Below are positions 6,210-64,000 of a stretch of 64,000 nt of DNA, piece by piece. Under the pieces are notes generated by a model. The model did no database searches. It was not told the origin of the DNA and worked only from the letters and a program-made list of their open reading frames with translations. Within the stretch, counting starts at the first letter, position 1, and each line of letters opens with the position of its first letter. The stretch lies in NCBI GenBank assembly GCA_002269645.1, contig NIVC01003839.1, forward strand, positions 10,430 to 74,429, read 5' to 3'. Both the position numbers and the translations under genes were made by a program. Source of the DNA: Macrostomum lignano. Lineage: Eukaryota.

Positions 6210-10605
<4,396 letters not shown>

Positions 10606-13786: not shown

Positions 13787-29287
<15,501 letters not shown>

Positions 29288-30082
29288 AGAATTTGAGCTC
29301 GCTATTGTTGGCCTGTCCAACAGAGTTGTGCGTCTATCTATTTTCTTACGCAACAGATATTTATTTATTGATCAAAAAGGATTTACAACACGAATATGCA
29401 TATTTTTCTGCTAACTAAAATATTTTGCACTCTTTCTTCCACTGTCTTGTCTGAGTTTGTTGACTTATTAACTGCCTGTCTGCCTCTCAATGAACGCCGT
29501 GCGATAATTGTTGTTCTACCTAGATAGGCCACAGATCTTCTAATAGCAGAGAGGCTGCAGAAAAGGGAAATCAGATAACAAACTGGTCAGTAAGAATTAC
29601 CTCAGTAATTTTAATTATTTTTTTATGTTTTCTCAATGCATAGTGAAAAAAATACCGTCGACGTTCGTAAAAAACTACTGATTAGTAGTTTGCTCTACTA
29701 TGGCCTAACTAGAGATCACACTATCTACTGGCAAGGCCATTTATAAACCTAATAAGCCTATTATATATATTACTCATTGTAAAATGACTGTATAGTAATG
29801 TGTAGAGCTCACTTTATTTCCTAACTGTTCTCGTTTTACAATATTTACTTTAATCTTATTTCATTTTTTGCCTGTCAGCGGACGCGAGATCAGAGCTTTA
29901 GGCAGGAAAAGCAATTCACTTTTCTGTTAGCTGTTTATTTTCATACCGAGAACAAGCCTATTATATAAATATACATATACTCAAGCCATTATATTGCACA
30001 TTGCGCAGAGTGAGTTCTTTAGTAGTGTATTTATCCGGCCTTCAAAAAAATTCTAAGAAACTCCTATGTTCCCATGCATTGA

Positions 30083-30165
30083 ATCACCGAAGTTAAGCAA
30101 CGTTGGGTTTGGTTAGTACTTGGATGGGTGACCGCCTGGGAATACCAAATGCTGTTGTCTTTTTT
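30083..30165 (+). pseudogene. 5S rRNA-derived fragment (3' two-thirds plus oligo-T)
   Basis: ATCACCGAAGTTAAGCAACG...GGTTAGTACTTGGATGGGTGACCGCCTGGGAATACC...GCTGTTG followed by TTTTTT. The 5' third is not recognisable. Confidence 0.85.
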
Positions 30166-30780: not shown

Positions 30781-32429
30781 CAACTTCTGAGCCGAGAGGG
30801 GCGTCATTCTGTTTTATGCTCTGTGCCTCTGGCATACATGTAGGGACTCAGAACGCGATTTGTTTTTTTGCTTCAGTAAAGATACAGGCCTACATGCAGC
30901 ATGGGGTCGTTTCAGTATGAAAATTCTGAATCCATCAGACGCAGTAGAATCGGGACAACCTGCTGTGTTGTGAGCTGTCTGCTCCTGTGATTGAAACTAT
31001 AGTATTCCAAAGTGCCTTTGGAAGCAGTAAACAAATAAGCTGTTCGGTAGAGATATTCTTGGTCAATATTTTACAAGTACACGGTCTATACAAAGCAGAG
31101 AGGTCATTTAGAGCAGAGAAAGTAACTAAAAAAATGTTTTGCTACGTCATCATTTGTCTAAAATTGTTTCGCCATAATATTCTTAACTAGAAAGAACTGA
31201 AGCACTGGCTTTTTTCAACGCAAATTAAGCATTGCACAAAAATGGTAATTATAGCTGCTAATTGGTAACTGGTAATTGTTTCTGGGTTTGCACAATTATC
31301 ACTTTTGAGCTAGTTTTATCCAGTTCTGATTCTTTCAGCAAAAAATGTATACATTACATATCGGGTTAGAAATAAAATTTTCACTTGTCAAAATTAGCGC
31401 TTTATGATTTTTTATTTGATTTGATACACTTTGATTCAATGTGAGATAAGGGAAAGGGAATTACCTAAGGCCATATATTATTACATATTGCATGTGTAAT
31501 TTTGATTACACATTTTTGAGCTTATATACGCGGTCGGCGCTAAAGTTTCCAATTGGAGTAAAATACAAAAAGCGCCGTATTTTATCCAAATGGCGTATTT
31601 ATTTAATAAGATGATTAAATAAATCTGTGATAAAAAGTTTAGGGTCGGGTCCGGCCGGGTTTTGGTTACCAGTTAGGGGTTCAGGGTTCAGAGGTTAGGG
31701 TCTGGGTTCTTGGTTAAGGGTAGGGGTACGAGGTTTTGGGTTTACCCAGCAGAACCCCGAAAAAATTGCCATCCCGAACACCTATTACACAGGATTGATC
31801 ACGCACAACTGTAAATATAGATAGCATTTGCTCATGCTCATGCTCAAGCTCATGCAACATGACTGCCATCATCTGTAGCCTGCAGAGTTCTAAAAAGTTC
31901 TTCTTAAAAAATTAATACTTGCCGTTCTACATTACTACTGTAGCCGTTATTGTAGTAGTAAATATTACTATTGTATACATGATAAATATCTTGCAATTTG
32001 GAGGCTTCTAGAAAGAGATAAAATGATGGATTTATTAATTAAAGCGGAGATTGCACAAAAAAATGCTAACGTTTTTCATCCATTTCCTTTCGGCATTTTT
32101 TCTCCATTTTCTCGTGTTGATGACTCGCTTGACTCGCTTAGCGGCGTCCCCCTGTTGGACCCCGCATGCAAGACTATACCCACAAGAGTCTAAGCAGGCA
32201 AGATGTACTCTTGTGCGGGACGTGTGCGATCGCCATCCATCACAACTCTCTAGTGATAGACGACCTATTGATAAGGGCACCTGCTGCGGGGCTTGATACC
32301 AACATCGTAAGCTGCACTGGCATGTCGTCGGGGGGGGGAGGGGGTTTCAGTTTTCATCTTCTGCAGCCGCGGTAATGGTGCAGCCAAAGGCTACCGTTTG
32401 AAAGTCAGCCACTTATCTGGAGAGCCCCT

Positions 32430-32985
32430 AGGCCTAACCCTCGGTCAGCCGCTCCCCCCAGCAGAGCTCCTATAGGCCTGACCCTCGGTCAGCCGCTCCC
32501 CCCAGCAGAGCTCCTATAGGCCTGACCCTCGGTCAGCCGCTCCCCCCAGCAGAGCTCCTATAGGCCTGACCCTCGGTCAGCCGCTCCCCCCAGCAGAGCT
32601 CCTATAGGCCTGACCCTCGTTCAGCCGCTCCCCCCAGCAGAGCTCCTATAGGCCTGACCCTCGGTCAGCCGCTCCCCCCAGCAGAGCTCCTATAGGCCTG
32701 ACCCTCGGTCAGCCGCTCCCCCAGCAGAGCTCCTATAGGCCTGACCCTCGTTCAGCCGCTCCCCCAGCAGAGCTCCTATAGGCCTGACCCTCGGTCAGCC
32801 GCTCCCCCCAGCGGAGCCCCTATAGACCTGACCCTCGGTCAGCCGCTCCCCCCAGCAGAGCTCCTATAGGCCTGACCCTCGGTCAGCCGCTCCCCCCAGC
32901 GGAGCCCCTATAGGCCTGACCCTCGGTCAGCCGCTCCCCCCAGCAGAGCTCCTATAGGCCTGACCCTCGGTCAGCCACTGCCTCA
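32430..32985. repeat. 44-bp minisatellite CCCTCGGTCAGCCGCTCCCCCCAGCAGAGCTCCTATAGGCCTGA (intergenic)
   Basis: About 12 units read directly. Confidence 0.95.
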
Positions 32986-34011
32986 GGAGAGCCCCTAGGC
33001 CTGACCCTCGCCAAGATCGCATGCAACCTATAGAGGGGCCCAGTTGGCTGGATGAGGATGGCTACAGTACGGGAGCAATTTAACAGCTACATGTCCAGAT
33101 AATGATGTGGATAAGTGCAAGTACGAGCATATATTTAACTTTGCAAACAGTTCAAAGGGTAGCACTACAAAAAAGGTTTTTTGGACCCTTTGATCTGACC
33201 TTGCTTAACCTTGATTTATAAATCTGACGTTAAAGCTATAGGGTACAGCCAAAGCTTTATAATGTTACTTTATTTTAGAGAGAAAACGTCTCATCAATCA
33301 AGTAAAAAAGCTAACCTTCTACTGTACATCCAAAATTTACAAATTTGGAGCAAATAGAAAGTCGGCCGTCAAAAAGATGCACGCGTTTCGACAGTTTAAG
33401 CGTCATTCTGCTGAAGAAGTAGAGTGAAAAGAAGTGAAGACACTGGAGAGGTGGTCCTATGCTGAATCTGATGGATTCAGAAGTTGCATGCTGAAAGTTC
33501 TGATGACTTGCGTGTAAAAAAAGCATTGGATGAAGCAAAATCAGAACAGCAGAATCCTACGATGTATCCGACAGAGAGCGGCGGCGAGGTCACCAGTTCC
33601 GGTTGTAAAAAAAGAAAAAAGTGAAAAAATTGAAAGATAAACTCCCGACAATAAAACGATTCAAACAGTAAAAATATTAAAAATTTCTCTCAATAAAAAT
33701 TTTTGACCATCGCATATCTAGACAGAGGCAGCCTTGAGCCGGCACAAGAAATCATCCAGAAGCCATGGAGGCAGGAGCCTTGCTTTCTCTGCATTGGAAT
33801 TTCCTGACTTTCAGAAGAGTCGCCAGCTCGGTGCCATAAACTCGGCCATTAGCCGAACGACCAACACCTCTGAAGGCTTCCGGACTCTTCTGCATTTAAG
33901 AAAGTGGATTTCTGGCTCAGAAAATTCAAGCCATCAGCGACTCTGCAACTGCCGAACTGCGAATTCTTTCAACTCGAAGATTCAATCTCGCTCGATCTAC
34001 AAGCCGAAGTC

Positions 34012-34173
34012 ATGCTGAGATTTCTGATGCTCCTCGTTGCTCTGATTCTGGTGGGCGCCACGCAGCAGGCTCAGGCTGATTCATGCAGCTGCGAAGATAA
34101 CAAATGGCTGTGCAAGACCAAGTCAGGACGCTTCTGCGGTATCTGCCTTGGCCAGGGCGGCTGCTATGACTGA
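34012..34173 (+). CDS. Small secreted cysteine-rich peptide precursor, 53 aa (22-aa signal plus 31-aa mature peptide, 6 Cys)
   Basis: MLRFLMLLVALILVGATQQAQA|DSCSCEDNKWLCKTKSGRFCGICLGQGGCYD*. Hydrophobic core, AQA cleavage motif and even Cys count. GC-rich codons like the neighbouring genes. AATAAA at 34231. Confidence 0.75.
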   Translation: MLRFLMLLVALILVGATQQAQADSCSCEDNKWLCKTKSGRFCGICLGQGGCYD

Positions 34174-34230
34174 GATGCCGAGAAGGCCCGACTTCGGACT
34201 TAACAGGAACCACTAAACTTTGATTCTCTA

Positions 34231-34236
34231 AATAAA
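34231..34236 (+). terminator. Polyadenylation signal of the peptide gene
   Basis: AATAAA 58 nt after the stop. Confidence 0.5.
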
Positions 34237-34315
34237 ACCGACCTATCATTGCAGCTACTTACCAACTTTGTGTGTGCAATGCTTGCATCCATAAAACAAT
34301 GTATTGTTGTCATTC

Positions 34316-34515
34316 ATTCATTCAGTCAGTCAGTCAGTCAGTCAGTCAGTCAGTCAGTCAGTCAGTCAGTCAGTCAGTCAGTCAGTCAGTCAGTCAGTCA
34401 GTCAGTCAGTCAGTCAGTCAGTCAGTCAGTCAGTCAGTCAGTCAGTCAGTCAGTCAGTCAGTCAGTCAGTCAGTCAGTCAGTCAGTCAGTCAGTCAGTCA
34501 GTCAGTCAGTCAGTC
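34316..34515. repeat. (TCAG)n microsatellite, ~50 perfect units
   Basis: Direct reading. Confidence 0.98.
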
Positions 34516-36539: not shown

Positions 36540-52310
<15,771 letters not shown>

Positions 52311-55032: not shown

Positions 55033-58000
55033 TCACGTGTTGCTGAAATTCACGTAGGCATTCTCCGAGCTCACCTTGTAGCTCTCGCTGGCGCCGCCGG
55101 TTCCGCTGGCGCCGCCTCCGCTGGCGCCGAAGAATCGCTCCCGGTAGCGGCTGGGCCGGTGCTCAATCAGCCAGGCGCCCAGGCGGCTTCCCGGATGTCG
55201 GAAGCCGTACAGCAGGACGCCGGCCACTGTGGCGACCGCAGCCAGCGCAAGGATGCCCAGGCAGACGCCGAGTGCCACCTGACCGGCGCTGCGCCTGCTG
55301 GCTGCCTCTGGCGGCTGCTTCGTGCCGGTGCGACCGAGCGGCACAATGCTGCGGTCGCCGTCACCGCAGGTTCCGCCGGCCTGCGGTTCATGGTGTCAGT
55401 GATGAATTTATTTGTGTCAGTGATGAATTGATTTGTGTCAGTGATGAATTGATGTGTGTCAGTGATGAATTGATGTGTGTCAGTGATGAATTGATGTGTG
55501 TTGGTGACTCAGTGATGAATTGATTTGTGTCAGTGATGAATTGATGTGTGTTGGTGACTCAGTGATGAATTGATTTGTGTCAGTGATGAATTGATGTGTG
55601 TTGGTGACTCAGTGATGAATTGATTTGTGTCAGTGATGAATTGATGTGTGTTGGTGACTCAGTGATGAATTGATTTGTGTCAGTGATGAATTGATGTGTG
55701 TTGGTGACTCAGTGATGAATTGATTTGTGTCAGTGATGAATTGATGTGTGTTGGTGACTCAGTGATGAATTGATTTGTGTCAGTGATGAATTGATGTGTG
55801 TTGGTGACTCAGTGATGAATTGATTTGTGTCAGTGATGAATTGATGTGTGTTGGTGACTCAGTGATGAATTTATTTGTGTCAGTGATGAATTGATTTGTG
55901 ACAGTGATGAACTGATTTGTGTCAGCGATAGATAGATTGTGTCAGTGATAGATAGATAGTGTTAGCGATAGATAGATTGTGTCAGTGATAGATAGATTGT
56001 GTCAGTGATAGATAGATAGTGTCAGCGATAGATGGATTGTGTCAGCGATAGATAGATAGATTGTGTCAGCAATAGATAGATAGATTGTATCAGCGATAGA
56101 TAGATTGTGTCAGTGATAGATAGATAGATTGTGTCAGCGATAGATAGATTTTGTCAGCGATAGATAGATAGTGTCAGTGATAGATAGATTGTGTCAGTGA
56201 TAGATAGATTGTGTCAGCGATAGATAGATTGTGTCAGCGATAGATAGATAGATTGTGTCAGTGATAGATAGATTGTGTCAGCGATAGATAGATTGTGTCA
56301 GTGTTAGATAGATTGTGTCAGCGATAGATAGATTGTGTCAGCGATAGATAGATAGATTGTGTCAGTGATAGATAGATTGTGTCAGCGATAGATAGATTGT
56401 GTCAGCGATAGATAGATAGATTGTGTCAGTGATAGATAGATAGTGTCAGCGATAGATTTTGTCAGCGATAGATAGATTGTGTCAGCGATAGATAGATTGT
56501 GTCAGTGATGAACTGATTTGTGTCAGCGATAGATAGATTGTGTCAGTGATAGATAGATAGTGTTAGCGATAGATAGATTGTGTCAGTGATAGATAGATTG
56601 TGTCAGTGATAGATAGATAGTGTCAGCGATAGATGGATTGTGTCAGCGATAGATAGATAGATTGTGTCAGCGATAGATAGATTGTGTCAGTGATAGATAG
56701 ATAGATTGTGTCAGCGATAGATAGATTGTGTCAGTGATAGATAGATTGTGTCAGTGATAGATAGATTGTGTCAGCGATAGATAGATAGATTGTGTCAGCG
56801 ATAGATGGATTGTGTCAGTGATGAACTGATTTGTGTCAGCGACAAATAGAATGTGTCAGCGATAGATAGATAGTGTCAGCGATAGATGGATTGTGTCAGC
56901 GATAGATAGATAGATTGTGTCAGCGATAGATAGATAGATTGTGTCAGCGATAGATAGATAGATTGTGTCAGCGATAGATAGATAGATAGTGTCAGCGATA
57001 GATGGATTGTGTCAGCGATAGATAGATAGATTGTGTCAGCGATAGATAGATAGATTGTGTCAGCGATAGATAGATTGTGTCAGTGATAGATAGATAGTGT
57101 CAGCGATAGATAGATTGTGTCAGCGATAGATAGATTGTGTCAGCGATAGATAGATGGATTGTGTCAGCGATAGATGGATTGTGTCAGCGATAGATAGATA
57201 GATTGTGTCAGCGATAGATAGATAGATTGCGTCAGCGATAGATGGATTGTGTCAGACAGAAACAAATCACAAAAACAGCAGCCCAATATCAATATTAGCT
57301 TTGGCTAAAGTGGCATGCAGAGCTGACGGGCGGCAAGGCAAACACATTCCGGCTGGTGAGAAACTGATGGATTTAACAATCGAGCACTCTGTATGATTTG
57401 CAGTTGCAACAACTGCAAGGCAATAAAATGAAGGCTGTTAAGAAACGATAAAAAGTTGATAAAAATGCTACTTAAAAGTGAAAGCAGTTCTGTGAAAATG
57501 AAACGCTTAAATAAGTGAAAGAAAGTGAATTATTGATTTGTGTTTTATTGTTGCCGTACACAGTCGTGGTCCACGACGACCACATCGACAGTGGTGGCCT
57601 CCGTGGCCTGGGTGCTGCGTTCGCGAGTAGTAGTAGTAGCAGTAGTAGCAGCGGTAGTAGTAGTTTCAACCCTACGAGTTGTGATGTCCTTCCAGCAGAG
57701 CCTTGTGAACTGAGATTACACGCGTTTGTGTTGCCCAGTCAGAACTCTATTAGCTACTTATTACTGAGGAACTTCTCTGATGCTGGCGCGATAAAAAGTT
57801 TTGGTTTGCAATAGCAAATTCTACAGATTGTATCAATTGTAAGTTGGTCAGCTTGATTTACATGAGGTAGAAGGGAAAAGTTTTAAAAATTAGATATGGG
57901 AGTGGGATACGGGAAGTGAGATATGGGAATTGAGATACGGGAAGTGAGATATGGGAAGTGAGATACGGGAAGTGAGATATGGGAATTGAGATACGGGAAG

Positions 58001-61000
58001 TGAGATATGGGAAGTGAGATACGGGAAGTGAGATATGGGAATTGAGATACGGGAAGTGAGATATGGGAAGTGAGATACGGGAAGTGAGATATGGGAAGTG
58101 AGATATGAGAAGTGAGATACGGGAAGTGAGATATGGGAAGTGAGATACGGGAAGTGAGATACGGGAAGTGAGATATGGGAAGTGAGATACGGGAAGTGAG
58201 ATATGAGAAGTGAGATACGGGAAGTGAGATATGAGAAGTGAGATACGGGAAGTGAGATATGAGAAGTGAGATACGGGAAGTGAGATATGAGAAGTGAGAT
58301 ACAGGAAGTGAGATATGAGAAGTGAGATACGGGAAGTGAGATACGGGAAGTGAGATATGAGAAGTGAGATATGGCAAGTGAGATATGGGAAGTGCGATAC
58401 GGGAAGCGAGATATGAGAAGTGAGATACGGGAAGTGAGATACGGGAAGTGAGATATGAGAAGTGAGATATGGGAAGTGAGAGATGGGAAGTGAGATACGG
58501 GAAGTGAGATATGGGAAGTGCGATACGGGAAGCGAGATATGAGAAGTGAGAGATGGGAAGTGAGATACGGGAAGTGAGATATGGGAAGTGCGATACGGGA
58601 AGCGAGATACGGGAAGTGAGATTTGGGATGTGAGATACGGGAAGTGAGATATGAGAAGTGAGATATGGGAAGTGAGATATGGGAAGTGAGAGATGGGAAG
58701 TGCGATACGGGAAGCGAGATACGGGAAGTGAGATATGGGATGTGAGATACGGGAAGTGAGATATGAGAAGTGAGATACGGGAAGTGAGATATGAGAAGTG
58801 AGATATGGGAAGTGAGATACGGGAAGTGAGATACGGGAAGTGAGATATGGGAAGTGAGATACGGGAAGTGAGATATGGGAAGTGAGATATGGGAAGTGAG
58901 ATATGGGAAGTGAGATATGGGAAGTGAGATATTAGAAGTGAGAGATGGTAAGTTTAAAAAGCCAACAGAGCCACTATGTAAATTAAAACACTCACCAAAA
59001 CTGTCAATCTTTTGACCCAAATAAAAACAATAAACAGACTGCAAAACCAGCATAACCCAAACTCACCGAATAGTGGCACTCGGAGTCGTGCCAGTCCTGT
59101 AGCCGACGGTCGACCCCGGAGCTGCAGCGGCCCAGATCGTAGCACCAGCTGCAGTTGAAGGCGGGGACTCGCGACCGGTCAGTGCAGTTGGAGCAGCTGG
59201 TCTGCTGGTTGCAGGCTGGGAATTGTGGGAGTGGAGAAGCTATTTGTTATATGATTGCTTTCTTGGGATAAATTTGTGTACAGCTAACCACAGCTCAAAT
59301 TTAGTCTCAATGTGATCTTAATGTCACCCCAATGTGATCTTAATGTCACCCCAATGTGATTTTAATGTCACCCCAATGTGATCTTAATGTCAGTCCCTAT
59401 GTGATCTTAATGTCAGTCTGAATGTGATCTTAATGTCAGTCTCAATGTGATCTTAATGTCACCCCAATGTGATCTTAATGTCAGTCCTATGTGATCTTAA
59501 TGTCAGTCTGAATGTGATCTTAATGCCCGTCTCAATGTCATCTTAATGTCACCCTAATGTGATCTTAATGTCAGTCCCTATGTGATCTTAATTCCAGTCT
59601 CAATGTCATCTTAATGTCACCCCAATGTCATCTTAATGTCAGTCTGAATGTGATCTTAATGCCCGTCTCAATGTCATCTTAATGTCAGTCTGAATGTGAT
59701 CTTAATGTCAGTCTAAATTTGATCTTAATGTTAGTCTGAATGTGATCTTAATATCAGTCTGAATGTGATCTTAATGTCAGTCTGAATGTGATCTTAATGT
59801 TAGTCTGAATGTGATCTTAATGTTAGTCTGAATGTGATCTTAATGTCAGTCTGAATGTGATCTTAATGTTAGTCTGAATGTGATCTTAATGTCAGTCTGA
59901 ATGTGATCTTAATGTTAGTCTGAATGTGATCTTAATATCAGTCTGAATGTGATCTTAATGTTAGTCTGAATGTGATCTTAATGTCAGTCTGAATGTGATC
60001 TTAATGTCAGTCTGAATGTGATCTTAATGTCAGTCTCAATGTGATCTTAATGTCACCCCAATGTGATCTTAATGTCAGTCCCTATGTGATCTTAATGTCA
60101 GTCTGAATGTGATCTTAATGTCAGTCTGAATGTGATCTTAATTTAGTCTTAACCCAAGATACCATTGAGTAAACCTAATTAAAGTCACCTCATCGTCACC
60201 TAGTCATGGTTACGAACTCGCACTAAAATAACAACACAAGTGCAGCGCCACTTACTCGGCTGGTGCACCAGATGGATTATGCCGTCTGTGACAATTTGAT
60301 CCCGTGGCACTCGCAGCTCGTGGTATCTCACAATCTTGCGCAACACGGTGCCTGAGGAAACAACTAATAAATTTAGAATGATGAATTATTTGACTGGTTA
60401 GTGCGTAAATTAGTGAAGATTTATAGATAGATTGACACGTATCTGGCAAACAAGATAATAAATTACAAGTCTAATAGATTAAAAGCAAAGTAGATAGTGG
60501 TGCAGTCAATCAGTTAGTTAAATAATGTTATTTATTACATGGTAAAGCGAAGGCTAAATTAAGTTAATTAGAATATACAGAGCAGTTATTAATTTTATAT
60601 TATACACGCAGAGAAATAGCTTGTACAGGTTTCAGAAATAGTTGCTCAGCTCAAGACAGTAAGATAATAAGTTGATTAAGGTACAAGGAGCTAGTTTAAA
60701 CAGGTAACACACCGAATAGCCTATCGAACCTTCAGTAACAGGTTGTCTGAATACCCCATCAAACCTTCAGTAACAGGTTGTCTGAATACCCCATCAAACC
60801 TTCAGTAACAAGTTGGCTGAATACCCCATCAAACCTTCAGTAACAAGTTGTCTGAATACCGAACCAAACCTTCAGTAAGGGTAGCCTGAATACCCCATCA
60901 AACCTTCAGTAACAAGTTGTCTGAATACCCCATCAAACCTTCAGTAACAAGTTGTCTGAATACCGAACCAAACCTTCAGTAAGGGTAGCCTGAATACCCA

Positions 61001-64000
61001 TCAAACCTTCAGTAAAAGTTGTCTGAATACCCATCAAACCGTCAGTAACAAGTTGTCTGAATACCCCATCAAACCTTCAGTAACAAGTTGTCTGAATACC
61101 CCATCAAACCTTCAGTAACAAGTTGTCTGAATACCGAACCAAACCTTCAGTAAGGGTAGCCTGAATACCCCATCAAACCTTCAGTAACAAGTTGTCTGAA
61201 TACCCCATCAAACCTTCAGTAACAAGTTGTCTGAATACCGAACCAAACCTTCAGTAAGGTAGCCTGAATACCCCATCAAACCTTCAGTAACAAGTTGTCT
61301 GAATACCTCATCAAACCTTCAGTAACAAGTTGTCTGAATACCCCATCAAACCTTCAGTAACAAGTTGTCTGAATACCCCATCAAACCTTCAGTAACAAGT
61401 TGTCTGAATACCCCATCAAACCGTCAGTAACAAGTTGTCTGAATACCCCATCAAACCTTCAGTAACAAGTTGTCTGAATACCCATCAAACCTTCAGTAAC
61501 AAGTTGTCTGAATACCCCACCAAACCTTCAGTAAGGGTAGCCTGAATACCCCATCAAACCTTCAGTAACAAGTTGTCTGAATAACCCATCAAACCTTCAG
61601 TAAGGGTAGCTGAATACCCCATCAAACCTTCAGTAACAAGTTTCTGAATACCCCATCAAACCGTCAGTAACAAGTTGTCTGAATACCCCATCAAACCTTC
61701 AGTAACAAGTTGTCTGAATACCCCACCAAACCTTCAGTAAGGGTAGCCTGAATACCCCATCAAACCTTCACAAACTACAATTCTTTATTGAATTGTCAAA
61801 TTTTAATAAGAGTACGGAACCTGGCAACTAGGATTGCATTGAGCAAGGTCAAAATACAGGCCCTAGCAATGGTTTTTCTTACCTATCCCAGGAGCTTTCA
61901 CTTCATAGTAAAGGCATCTGACAGTCCAATTTTCAGCATAGACGAGGCTGACCTCAAGGCTTCCATGGTGATTGGGATCTGAATTAGTCAGTAGGAATCG
62001 ATTACTATTATTAATCAATTTTAAGGCTAAACAAACCAGCACACTATCAAGTCCGATGGCTCACCTTAATGTAGTCGAAGACGATAGATCCGTTTTGAGA
62101 ATATGGCGCATTGAAAGGAAAAGGTGCCCCTGTAACAGAGTTCAGAATTTTGCGCTAGGTGAGTATTATATAAATAGATTTAAGTACAATGTTTAAATGG
62201 ATTCTGTGGTCTAATTTGACAAACTATACACAGAAAGTATCTTGTAAAGCGTGAACAGACAAGATTGAAGGAGTGTCAGTGACCTGAAGTGAGAACAGAC
62301 AAGATTGAAGAGTGTCAGTGACCTGAAGTGAGAACAGACAAGATTGAAGAGTGTCAGTGACCTGAAGTGAGAACAGACAAGATTGAGTGTCAGTAACCTG
62401 AAGTGAGAACAGACAAGATTCAGTGTCAGTGACCTGAAGTGAGAACAGACAAGATTGAGTGTCAGTGACCTGAAGTGAGAAAAGACAAGATTGAAGGAGT
62501 GTCAGTGACCTGAAGTGAGAACAGACAAGATTGAAGAGTGTCAGTGACCTGAAGTGAGAACAGACAAGATTGGGCGTCAGTGACCTGAAGTGAGAACAGA
62601 CAAGATTGGGCGTCAGTGACCTGAAGTGAGAACAGACAAGATTGGTGTCTATATGCAAAGCACAAGATCAAGAGACCATTTCAGCCCCTCATTACAACAG
62701 CAGTCAGAGAGAACTTACAAGAATAGTTTGAGCTCACAAACAGATTCTCCCAGCGCACCCAGAAGGCGTCCTCAGCTTCGACATACTTGATAGCGGACAC
62801 CGACTTCCTGGTCTCGAAGTCGGCCATCATTGGCGCAATGTATTGCGAGAAAGTCAAGTAAGGATGCGTCAGATCGTTTACGTAGATGAACCCTGCGTGT
62901 TGGGGATTGGGCGTGCAACTTTTGATTATTTTTGTTTGATTTATTTCTATTTTCAGACAAAAAGCGCACAAAGCTTGATTAAATAATAATAATAGCTGAT
63001 TACACCTGCCCTGACGGCCAGATGAGCAACCGACAGCTCAGCCGCAGCTATTGCGCGGCGCATCTGAAGGCTGCGTACGGCTGTTCAGTCCAAGGACTGG
63101 GGGTCGCCAAACACCACACCCTCAATTACCCCAGCTAATGCTGGCACCCATTTTACAGCTGGGTGAACTGAAGCAATGCAGATCGTTAAGTGTTTTGCTC
63201 AAGGACACAAACTGTTCCGAGTGGGATCGGGAATCGAACCCCCGACCTTCAAGTCGTGAGTCCGACGCTCACATTAAACAGGCTGATTAAACAGGTATCA
63301 GCAGGTTGATAGATTAAATAAATAAATAGCACAGCCCAGCGACTCAGTGGCAATAAAATCAGGCACTAACAATGCGAGGACTACACATACGTATCCGACT
63401 GTATATCTATCGCATGAATTATTGCTCAACCCTGAGCTAAAACCAATTGGAAAGAGTCGGAATGTCAGGACAGGTGGGTGCACTGTTCAGAAAAAAACAT
63501 TTATGGCAAAACCTGGGACCGCGAAGGGGAGGAAGAGCTGTTACAACAGAATGGGGAGCTGCGTACTCCACGCATGTATTCCCAAGCAGCCAGCCATGCG
63601 CAGAGCTGCATCAGTGCAGCTCCCAACAAGCGAGACAATAGTACAGCCTTTTCCTTACAGAGGCTGCTACGTTTTTAAGTCCTACGGGGAAAAGCAAACA
63701 CAATGCGTTGTCATGGCAAACCAGTGCCACGCCAGCCTCACCGCTAGTGGTAAGCACAATCGACTTGACTGAATGGCCGTAGAAGTCGAACGAAAAAACC
63801 AGTGAATTGTCTGAAATACGAGTATTAGCGGCGGGTTTATAGGGTGGCCGGTCACTCGGTGCATAGTAGAACCTATTTACCGCACAACTGATTTCCCAAC
63901 GCAAGACAAAGCTCGAGGTCGAAAAGACCCAAGCACTTACCAATGCCAGATTTTTTCCATTGTTCAATTTAATATTGGAGGCGAATCGAATAAGCTGAGA
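55033..64000 (-). CDS. PLXDC: Plexin domain-containing (PLXDC/TEM7-like) type I membrane protein, 5' end outside window; exons >64000-63941, 63810-63742, 62892-62719, 62129-62065, 61978-61883, 60351-60256, 59215-59067, 57709-57560, 55380-55033; four inferred 1-nt indels
   Basis: [39 protein letters not shown] domain C..C...[21 protein letters not shown]. Thr-rich stalk, TM segment and cytoplasmic YGFRHPGS...WLIEHRPSR (cf. PLXDC2 HHPTS...FFIERRPSRW). Confidence 0.88.
55395..57255. repeat. Compound array: 21-bp GTCAGTGATGAATTGATGTGT units, then GTCAG(C/T)GATA(GATA)nGATTGT units
   Basis: Direct reading; fills the last PLXDC intron. Confidence 0.95.
57893..58947. repeat. 14-bp minisatellite GGGAAGTGAGATA(C/T)
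   Basis: Direct reading; PLXDC intron. Confidence 0.96.
59302..60150. repeat. 23-bp minisatellite TCTGAATGTGATCTTAATGTCAG
   Basis: Direct reading; PLXDC intron. Confidence 0.95.
60715..61772. repeat. 35-bp minisatellite CTGAATACCCCATCAAACCTTCAGTAACAAGTTGT
   Basis: Direct reading; several units lack single bases. Confidence 0.95.
62250..62648. repeat. ~37-40-bp minisatellite GTGTCAGTGACCTGAAGTGAGAACAGACAAGATTG
   Basis: Direct reading; PLXDC intron. Confidence 0.94.
63016..63270 (-). mobile_element. Second copy of the CORE-like tRNA SINE, 5'-truncated (A box missing)
   Basis: Reverse complement aligns to 17695-17944, including the B box, CORE-like segment and 3' tail. Confidence 0.88.

What the first reader, a model, noticed from the sequence alone, without database searches (positions are those of the whole stretch)
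33890..34240. Uncharacterised secreted six-cysteine peptide gene (candidate antimicrobial, toxin or protease inhibitor)
Seen: a single exon, clean signal peptide, and mature DSCSCEDNKWLCKTKSGRFCGICLGQGGCYD with spacing C-x-C-x6-C-x7-C-x2-C-x5-C, a basic KTKSGR loop, a TATA-like CATTTAAG at ~33893 and AATAAA. The CxC..W.C part recalls VWC/pacifastin modules, but I cannot match the full spacing to alpha/beta/invertebrate defensins, macins or knottins from memory. Such short genes are often missed by annotation. Inference: a novel three-disulfide peptide family.
Basis: partly seen in the sequence, partly recalled or inferred. Interest (0 to 1): 0.7.

Follow-up and report, generated by a model that had tools for sequence, protein, structure and literature searches.

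The report
Orphan secreted six-cysteine flatworm peptide
A real, transcribed, single-exon gene of the flatworm Macrostomum lignano encodes a 53-residue precursor of a 31-residue secreted six-cysteine peptide; it has one fast-diverging sister gene, matches no known family, and its target is unknown.

Summary
On the + strand, an ATG at 34012 opens a 53-codon ORF (stop 34171-34173). It encodes a textbook signal peptide plus DSCSCEDNKWLCKTKSGRFCGICLGQGGCYD. CATTTAAG lies at 33893-33900 and AATAAA at 34231-34236.

The window is Macrostomum lignano contig NIVC01003839.1. The gene is already in GenBank as 'hypothetical protein BOX15_Mlig020725g1, partial', from a purely transcript-based annotation, so it was not missed and has RNA support. 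Three near-identical syntenic copies exist, consistent with the assembly's known redundancy.

One true paralogue exists, Mlig013770g1 (56 aa). It shares the promoter block, 5'UTR, signal peptide, both ends of the mature peptide, AATAAA and a downstream (GTCA)n microsatellite at 69-88% identity. The inter-cysteine core is only 37% identical and has different loop lengths. That is the 'conserved signal, hypervariable mature peptide' pattern.

Nothing significant was found in Pfam, in PDB by sequence or fold, in 5.8 and 1.8 billion protein sets, or in metagenomes. AlphaFold2 predicts a small all-beta fold (pLDDT 83). The peptides are neutral to acidic, which argues against a classic cationic antimicrobial peptide.

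Verdict: a lineage-restricted orphan family of secreted disulfide-rich peptides, probably a target-binding extracellular effector under diversifying selection. The target and the expressing tissue are unknown. Interest is modest.

The parts
33823..33924 (+). Proximal promoter block shared with the paralogue. It contains conserved motifs CAGC.CGGTG.CATAAA.TCGGCCAT and GGCTTCCGGACT (an ETS-like CTTCCGG). DNA homology between the paralogues begins at 33823.
   Evidence: blastn of the window against L004 starts at window 33823. Alignment A2 gives 69% identity. Motif roles are inferred only.
33893..33900 (+). TATA-like element CATTTAAG. CTGCATTTAAG is identical in the paralogue and in all three near-identical copies.
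   Evidence: It lies 28-30 nt upstream of the transcript 5' end implied by the 5'-partial GenBank CDS (33925 or 33928).
33925..34011 (+). 5' UTR. GenBank translates it as part of a 'partial' CDS. It has no ATG, and the equivalent frame in the paralogue carries a stop.
   Evidence: CDS coordinates; no uATG; stop in the paralogue; 77% identity to the paralogue.
34012..34077 (+). Signal peptide MLRFLMLLVALILVGATQQAQA, with predicted cleavage after AQA22.
   Evidence: It is 88% identical to the paralogue at DNA level, with dS 0.15. The cleavage site is inferred from the -3/-1 rule; SignalP was not run.
34078..34170 (+). Mature 31-residue peptide DSCSCEDNKWLCKTKSGRFCGICLGQGGCYD. It has six Cys, a mass of 3.38 kDa and pI 6.2. 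The hypervariable core is 34093-34152. The conserved ends are DSCSC and QGGCY.
   Evidence: AlphaFold2 predicts an all-beta fold with pLDDT 82.8.
34171..34173 (+). Stop codon TGA.
34174..34260 (+). 3' UTR with the polyadenylation signal AATAAA at 34231-34236. The signal is conserved in the paralogue.
   Evidence: The exact poly(A) site was not determined here.
34309..34515 (+). (GTCA)52 microsatellite just downstream of the gene. It is also present downstream of the paralogue and of the other two copies, so it is part of the ~0.6-kb duplicated unit.

Best explanation
This is a genuine, independently transcribed, single-exon gene of Macrostomum lignano (Mlig020725), driven by a TATA-like promoter.

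Shown:
- The first AUG of its ~330-nt mRNA opens a 53-residue precursor.
- The gene belongs to a two-locus family found only in M. lignano among the data searched.
- Between the two loci the promoter, UTRs, signal peptide and both ends of the mature peptide are conserved. The inter-cysteine loops are essentially randomised and differ in length, yet six cysteines are kept.

Inferred:
- A cleavable N-terminal signal peptide directs the precursor into the ER, with cleavage after A-Q-A22.
- The 31-residue product folds into a compact all-beta mini-protein held by three disulfides and is secreted.
- It acts outside the cell by binding a specific target through its variable loops. The loops are under diversifying selection because the target co-evolves (a microbe, predator or prey molecule, a protease, or a mating partner's receptor).

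My best single guess is a non-lytic defensive or inhibitory effector, such as a protease inhibitor or another target-binding peptide, made by a gland, gut or epidermal cell type. I do not think it is a membrane-disrupting antimicrobial peptide.
For: - Sequence features were verified.
- The gene is present in a purely transcript-derived annotation. The 5'-partial CDS start at 33925/33928 places the transcript start 28-30 nt after the TATA-like box.
- The paralogue P0005 (Mlig013770g1) was found by exhaustive HMMER at E=3.9e-5 and confirmed by profile at 2.2e-32.
- Segment identities to the paralogue: upstream 0.69, 5'UTR 0.77, signal 0.88, DSCSC 0.87, core 0.37, QGGCY to stop 0.86, 3'UTR 0.71, downstream 0.72. 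Fisher test of the core against non-coding flanks gives p=5e-7.
- Signal peptide dS is 0.15. In the core, pN and pS are both about 0.67.
- Only this frame is open in both paralogues.
- The three near-identical copies differ within the CDS by one synonymous Cys-codon change only.
- AlphaFold2 predicts four short beta strands with pLDDT 82.8. The paralogue gives the same topology at pLDDT 68.
- There are no dibasic processing sites or amidation signal (read directly from the sequence).
- Net charge is about -1 and about -4, which argues against a lytic cationic peptide.
Against: - No expression pattern, peptide detection or activity data could be reached. Neither gene ID occurs in the text of any paper searched or in the held supplements.
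- Secretion, signal cleavage and disulfide bonding are predictions.
- With only two family sequences, the core divergence cannot formally separate positive selection from relaxed constraint, or from segment replacement by indels or conversion. Synonymous sites in the core are saturated as well.
- The AlphaFold2 model rests on a two-sequence alignment. It found no structural neighbour, so the fold is unverified.
- The choice of a defensive or inhibitory role over a reproductive or signalling role is weakly founded.
Confidence: 0.6

Rival explanations
1. It is a seminal-fluid or other reproductive peptide, made in prostate, antrum or cement gland cells and transferred to or acting on the mating partner. 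Its loops diverge because of sexual conflict.
For: M. lignano has many small, secreted prostate-limited transcripts. Of the 76, 31 had no BLAST hit, and 38 of the 65 with an identifiable ORF have a signal peptide (PMC5977470). Reproduction-related genes evolve rapidly in the genus (PMC7336406, abstract). The conserved-signal, hypervariable-mature pattern fits sexual conflict as well as it fits defence.
Against: Neither Mlig020725 nor Mlig013770 appears in the complete (uncut) table that maps all in situ hybridisation (ISH)-characterised transcripts (prostate, antrum, gonads, glands) onto Mlig_37v3 gene IDs. Some primer pairs in that table are unmapped ('FALSE'), and the large expression tables were truncated in the held copies, so this is weak negative evidence.
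Confidence: 0.2
2. It is a classic host-defence antimicrobial peptide that kills microbes by membrane disruption.
For: It is small, secreted, disulfide-rich and lineage-specific, and it duplicates and diverges like many invertebrate AMP families. There are weak sub-threshold echoes of defensin entries: Pfam Defensin_propep at E=0.039, confined to the signal peptide, and PDB 5nce Defensin-1 at E=0.87 over 19 residues.
Against: The mature peptides are not cationic: pI 6.2 and 4.6, net charge about -1 and -4 at seawater pH. Both defensin echoes are below significance. One covers only the signal peptide. No helix or CS-alpha-beta motif is predicted. A non-lytic, target-specific antimicrobial is not excluded and is covered by the main explanation.
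Confidence: 0.08
3. It is an endogenous signalling peptide (a cysteine-rich neuropeptide, hormone or pheromone) that acts on a receptor of the worm itself or of conspecifics.
For: The size, the signal peptide and the compact disulfide scaffold are compatible with this.
Against: There are no dibasic prohormone cleavage sites or amidation signal. Endogenous ligands are normally conserved, but no homologue exists outside M. lignano in 5.8 or 1.8 billion proteins, and the paralogue's loops are randomised. A rapidly evolving water-borne pheromone remains possible.
Confidence: 0.07
4. The ORF is not translated. The transcript is non-coding and the peptide is a chance reading.
For: No proteomic evidence was reachable. 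The ORF is only 53 codons. GenBank labels the product 'hypothetical'.
Against: It starts at the first AUG, in good context and with no upstream ATG. It is the only frame kept open in both paralogues despite about 25% DNA divergence and several indels that all preserve the frame in the CDS. Both copies have six Cys, all TGC. The signal peptide is the most conserved segment of the whole unit (88%), more conserved than the UTRs. It is the only one of 275 ORFs with these features.
Confidence: 0.05

Closest known systems
Conotoxin-type and amphibian-AMP-type gene superfamilies (an evolutionary mode, not homology)
   Same: Paralogues keep a nearly identical signal peptide and UTRs and a conserved even number of cysteines, while the inter-cysteine loops of the mature peptide are hypervariable. 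Here the signal is 88% identical and the core 37%.
   Different: There is no sequence or framework relationship. There is no propeptide region between signal and mature peptide. The gene has a single exon. Only two loci are known. The animal is a diatom-feeding meiofaunal flatworm with no known venom apparatus (my own knowledge).
Pacifastin and VWC modules
   Same: Small cysteine-rich extracellular modules with a C-x-C element and an aromatic residue nearby. The predicted structure is all-beta, as in pacifastin.
   Different: The pacifastin signature (C-x9-12-C-N-x-C-x-C-x2-3-G-x3-6-C-T-x3-C) and the ten-cysteine VWC pattern do not fit C-x-C-x6-C-x7-C-x2-C-x5-C. There is no Pfam match even at E<=10.
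Cysteine-stabilised alpha-beta (CS-alpha-beta) defensins of invertebrates and plants
   Same: Six cysteines, a similar size and secretion. There is a weak 19-residue phmmer alignment to plant Defensin-1, PDB 5nce (E=0.87). Read backwards, the spacing resembles the C...CxxxC...C...CxC motif.
   Different: There is no CxxxC/CxC pairing in the forward direction, no predicted helix, no Pfam defensin-domain hit and no Foldseek hit. The peptides are not cationic.
Macrostomum lignano prostate-limited putative seminal fluid proteins (Mlig-pro1-76; PMC5977470)
   Same: Same species. Many are short, carry a signal peptide and lack homologues elsewhere.
   Different: This gene is not among the ISH-mapped transcripts. 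No tail-specific or socially plastic expression could be shown.

Membership tests
Pacifastin (Pfam PF05375) | Six-Cys signature C-x9-12-C-N-x-C-x-C-x2-3-G-x3-6-C-T-x3-C, and a match to the family HMM. | tested here: not met
   The spacing read from the sequence is C-x-C-x6-C-x7-C-x2-C-x5-C. hmmscan against Pfam-A gave no pacifastin match for the precursor or the mature peptides at E<=10. The signature itself is from my own knowledge.
von Willebrand factor type C (VWC, PF00093) | About 10 cysteines with C-x2-C-x-C and C-C-x2-C motifs, and a match to the family HMM. | tested here: not met
   There are only six Cys and no CC pair. There is no Pfam match.
CS-alpha-beta defensins (invertebrate, plant and fungal) | A CxxxC on an alpha-helix, disulfide-bonded to a CxC on a beta-strand, and an HMM match to a defensin domain. 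| tested here: not met
   There is no CxxxC. The AlphaFold2 model has four strands and no helix. There is no defensin-domain hit. The only hits are Defensin_propep at E=0.039, below its cut-off and lying on the signal peptide, and PDB 5nce at E=0.87.
Beta-defensin-like, big-defensin and sea-anemone defensin-like peptides | Six Cys ending in an adjacent CC pair. | tested here: not met
   Neither paralogue has a CC pair.
Inhibitor cystine knot (knottin) | I-IV, II-V, III-VI disulfide connectivity with the third disulfide threading the ring. | not testable with these tools
Foldseek of both models against PDB returned no match. A one-residue first loop (C-x-C) is atypical for knottins (my own knowledge).
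Inhibitor cystine knot (knottin) | A match to any Pfam knottin or toxin HMM. | tested here: not met
   No family matched the mature peptides at E<=10.
Secreted peptide superfamily with a conserved signal and a hypervariable mature region (functional class, not homology) | The signal peptide and UTRs are more conserved between paralogues than the mature loops, and an even cysteine count is retained. | tested here: met
   Signal 88% and core 37% identity. Fisher test against non-coding flanks gives p=5e-7. Both copies have six Cys.
M. lignano prostate-limited seminal fluid candidates (Mlig-pro1-76) | An ISH-verified prostate-limited transcript mapped to the gene ID. | tested here: inconclusive
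   The gene IDs are absent from the uncut ISH-transfer table S11 of PMC7336406. Several primer pairs there are unmapped, and the larger expression tables were truncated in the held copy.

The most novel reading that the evidence does not exclude
The two genes found a Macrostomum-specific peptide family with a disulfide fold not yet in the PDB. In this family one cysteine, and so one disulfide, has moved between paralogues. At DNA and predicted-strand level the 'F-C' of copy A (C4) matches 'F-C' of copy B (C5), which leaves A-C5 and B-C4 without counterparts. The hypervariable loops would be targeted at a co-evolving partner. Examples are a manipulative seminal-fluid or pheromone peptide in this sexual-conflict model species, or a new defensive toxin or inhibitor scaffold.
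Probability: 0.15. Interest if true: 0.55.

Novelty: new variant of a known kind. Interest (0 to 1): 0.3.

Why it matters
If the inference is right, this is a compact (31-residue) disulfide scaffold with a previously undescribed cysteine framework. It sits in a genetically tractable flatworm, where transgenesis and RNAi by soaking are available. It also comes with a built-in natural experiment: a paralogue with a conserved secretory and expression cassette but randomised loops.

That makes three things cheap to test:
- which cell type makes it;
- what the loops bind;
- whether orphan cysteine-rich peptides in free-living flatworms serve immunity, defence or sexual conflict.

The ~100-bp conserved promoter block could also serve as a small cell-type-specific driver.

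Orphan cysteine-rich secreted peptides are nonetheless very common in invertebrate genomes, so the finding is ordinary in kind. The gene model already exists in GenBank.

Tried and rejected
1. Pfam hmmscan of the precursor, both mature peptides, the 89-aa extended ORF, the upstream 94-aa ORF and the antisense 79-aa ORF gave nothing at or near threshold.
2. phmmer and profile hmmsearch against all PDB sequences gave only a non-significant 19-residue hit to 5nce.
3. AlphaFold2 models of both mature peptides were run through Foldseek. There were 0 hits against PDB, and the best BFVD hit had E=2. Model coordinates were not retrievable, so disulfide connectivity could not be read.
4. Three word-indexed searches of 5.8 billion proteins and one exhaustive HMMER search of 1.84 billion representatives returned only the two M. 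lignano clusters. The one extra hit, P0004 (1030 aa, 12 stretches), was rejected as a tandem-repeat score artefact.
5. The metagenome contig scan with the family alignment gave 320 pattern matches, none confirmed.
6. tblastn of both peptides against the window and all fetched loci found no further copy.
7. Full-text literature searches for both gene IDs found 0 papers. Supplement searches in six M. lignano papers found no occurrence, and a seventh paper had no supplement held as text. Most large tables were truncated in the held copy, so this says little.
8. Divergence among the three near-identical copies was tried as a test of constraint. It was too low everywhere (0-2 differences per 250 bp around the gene) to be informative.
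9. Trans-splicing acceptor reading: the implied 5' ends (33923-33928) do not sit directly after the AG at 33919-33920. They do sit at TATA +28-30, so I prefer a conventional start site.
10. The Rfam and tRNA scans show no RNA gene at the locus.

Full report
**What is there**

On the + strand an ORF runs from ATG 34012 to TGA 34171-34173. It encodes MLRFLMLLVALILVGATQQAQADSCSCEDNKWLCKTKSGRFCGICLGQGGCYD, 53 aa. The first 22 residues have the three regions of a secretory signal peptide:
- a basic residue at R3;
- a 12-residue hydrophobic core, with a Kyte-Doolittle 10-residue maximum of 3.56;
- a polar end with A-Q-A at positions -3 to -1.

CATTTAAG is at 33893-33900 and AATAAA at 34231-34236.

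**Where it comes from, and is it a gene?**

The peptide is 100% identical to the C-terminal 53 residues of GenBank PAA58764.1, 'hypothetical protein BOX15_Mlig020725g1, partial [Macrostomum lignano]'. The window is the last 64 kb of contig NIVC01003839.1 of assembly GCA_002269645.1 (Mlig_3_7). Locus L002 is 100% identical to it over the 7 kb compared.

That assembly's annotation was built only from RNA evidence: genome-guided StringTie/TACO assemblies, a de novo transcriptome, trans-splice and poly(A) read peaks, then TransDecoder (PMC5730564). The existence of the gene model is therefore itself transcript support.

The model is '5'-partial' because the frame happens to stay open from the transcript's first base (33925; 33928 in another copy). 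This puts the transcript start 28-30 nt downstream of the TATA-like box, the usual spacing. That last step is an inference from how 5'-partial ORFs are called.

The 87-nt leader has no ATG, and the start codon has a G at -3. Translation should therefore begin at 34012 and give the 53-aa precursor, not the 82-aa 'partial' protein. In the paralogue the same upstream frame contains a stop, which confirms this.

The gene lies in a 7.2-kb gap between an F-box/LRR gene and a protein kinase gene, all on the + strand.

**Copies**

The assembly holds three copies in the same F-box-to-kinase context (L001, L002, L003). They are 96-98% identical over several kb. Around the gene they differ by 0-2 bases per 250 bp. 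Within the CDS the only difference is one synonymous TGC to TGT change.

This fits the redundancy the genome paper describes, 180 Mb in duplicated blocks at least 95% identical. These are copies of one locus, not a tandem family. Their divergence is too low to say anything about constraint.

**A true paralogue, and how the family evolves**

An exhaustive HMMER search of 1.84 billion representative proteins found one further relative, P0005. It is 'hypothetical protein BOX15_Mlig013770g1', 56 aa, on contig NIVC01000025.1. A third hit, P0004, is a 1030-aa tandem-repeat protein matched in 12 stretches, and I reject it as an artefact.

The two loci share a unit of about 0.6 kb (window 33823-34434) and nothing beyond it. 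The shared unit includes:
- about 100 bp of promoter, with CTGCATTTAAG identical;
- the leader and the signal peptide;
- the peptide ends DSCSC/DECSC and QGGCY;
- AATAAA, and even the downstream (GTCA)n microsatellite.

| Segment | Identity to paralogue |
|---|---|
| Upstream | 0.69 |
| 5'UTR | 0.77 |
| Signal peptide | 0.88 |
| DSCSC | 0.87 |
| Inter-cysteine core | 0.37 |
| QGGCY to stop | 0.86 |
| 3'UTR | 0.71 |
| Downstream | 0.72 |

The core is significantly more diverged than the non-coding flanks (Fisher p=5e-7). By Nei-Gojobori counting the signal peptide has dS 0.15 and dN 0.125. In the core both proportions are about 0.67, which is saturated.

Loop lengths also change, from 7/2/5 to 5/4/7, yet both keep six Cys, all encoded by TGC. 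Only this reading frame is open in both loci. The antisense 79-aa ORF is not.

This is the well-known pattern of a conserved secretory cassette with a hypervariable mature peptide on a cysteine scaffold, seen in conotoxin and many host-defence or reproductive peptide families. The comparison is from my own knowledge. With only two sequences, and saturated synonymous sites in the core, I cannot formally separate positive selection from relaxed constraint or segmental replacement.

One nuance concerns which cysteines correspond. At DNA level, and in the predicted strands, 'R-F-C4' of this gene matches 'G-F-C5' of the paralogue about as well as the order-preserving alignment does. One cysteine may therefore have relocated.

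**Comparison with known families**

| Search | Result |
|---|---|
| Pfam-A, precursors | Only Defensin_propep, E=0.039 and 0.14, below cut-off and lying on the signal peptide |
| Pfam-A, mature peptides | Nothing at E<=10 |
| PDB sequences | One non-significant 19-residue alignment to a plant defensin (5nce, E=0.87); nothing with the family profile |
| AlphaFold2 | Mature peptide at mean pLDDT 82.8, four short beta strands, no helix; paralogue has a similar layout at pLDDT 68 |
| Foldseek | No PDB match for either model; nothing significant among viral models |
| 5.8-billion protein set | Only the two M. lignano clusters in three searches |
| JGI metagenome contigs | No confirmed relative |

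The pacifastin, VWC, CS-alpha-beta defensin and beta-defensin-like signatures all fail on direct inspection of the spacing. Knottin connectivity could not be tested. The family is, by every test available here, an orphan.

**What it most likely does**

Shown:
- it is a transcribed gene;
- the ORF is conserved, with a signal-peptide-like N-terminus and six cysteines;
- the paralogue keeps a conserved cassette but has a divergent core.

Inferred:
- ER targeting and cleavage after AQA22;
- three disulfides and secretion of a 3.4-kDa all-beta mini-protein;
- action by binding an extracellular target through the variable loops.

The peptides are neutral (pI 6.2) and acidic (pI 4.6). They have no dibasic processing or amidation sites. 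These points argue against a membrane-lytic cationic antimicrobial peptide and against a classical neuropeptide.

Hypervariable loops on a rigid scaffold are typical of canonical protease inhibitors, target-specific toxins or defence peptides, and reproductive proteins. The basic loop C-KTKSGRF-C in this copy would suit a trypsin-type reactive site, but that is speculation.

A seminal-fluid role is a serious rival in this species, where 76 prostate-limited transcripts are known and many lack homologues (PMC5977470). However, neither gene ID is in the complete table that maps all ISH-characterised transcripts onto Mlig_37v3 genes (PMC7336406 Table S11).

No paper text mentions either gene. The held supplements contain neither ID, though many large tables were truncated. 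Function therefore remains open.

My confidences:
- about 0.9 that this is a real secreted cysteine-rich peptide gene;
- about 0.6 for the whole statement, including action as a target-binding extracellular effector under diversifying selection;
- about 0.35 for the specific defensive or inhibitor reading.

**Novelty and interest**

The gene model is public but uncharacterised. The family, its cysteine framework and its mode of divergence appear undescribed. In kind it is a familiar object, an orphan cysteine-rich secreted peptide, so I rate it as a new variant of a known kind with modest interest (0.3). A solved structure with a new fold or connectivity, or a demonstrated role in sexual conflict or defence in this tractable model, would raise that.

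Noticed in passing
window 30062-30160 (+): A degenerate 5S rRNA-like element. It scores 41.4 bits against Rfam RF00001, just above the gathering score of 38. It has a 19-nt internal deletion and a mispaired helix I, so it is probably a 5S pseudogene or a 5S-derived repeat. It lies in the intergenic space about 4 kb upstream of the peptide gene.
   Followed up: partly
window, throughout; e.g. 6430-8561, 9104-10314, 23599-24429, 24778-25058, 42473-45381, 46530-47793, 55393-57255, 57892-58943, 60714-61770: The window is packed with long minisatellite arrays, with periods of 15-44 bp and up to 140 copies. They explain the extreme GC-skew blocks in the composition profile. The same 28-bp unit (CCAGCCTCCCAGAG..CAGTTGCTGGG) forms three separate arrays, at 9104-10314, 23599-24429 and 24778-25058.
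   Followed up: no
window 32429-33010: A 44-bp x 13 tandem array lies about 900 bp upstream of the peptide gene. Its copy number differs among the three copies of the locus, as shown by the staggered BLAST hits.
   Followed up: no
window 27162-27851: A tandem array with a 73/110-bp period. Its unit contains GGTTCGAATCC, the tRNA T-arm/box-B consensus, which suggests a tRNA- or SINE-derived satellite. ARAGORN finds no intact tRNA in the window.
   Followed up: no
window 34309-34515 and L004 about 10330-10470: A (GTCA)n microsatellite sits directly downstream of both paralogous peptide genes. It was therefore duplicated with the gene, or its seed sequence (TCATTCATTCAGTCAGTC) was. Its length differs among the three copies of the locus.
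   Followed up: partly
window 33823-33890: Conserved non-coding motifs in the shared promoter block: CAGC.CGGTG.CATAAA.TCGGCCAT and GGCTTCCGGACT. The latter contains an ETS-type CTTCCGG core, and CATAAA is the reverse complement of a Cdx/caudal-type TTTATG. These are candidate cell-type-specific cis-elements, based on motif resemblance only.
   Followed up: no
L001, L002 (= window), L003: The whole F-box/LRR - peptide - kinase segment is present three times in the assembly at 96-98% identity. The paralogue Mlig013770 appears only once. This may reflect the species' hidden polyploidy or uneven collapse of the assembly.
   Followed up: partly
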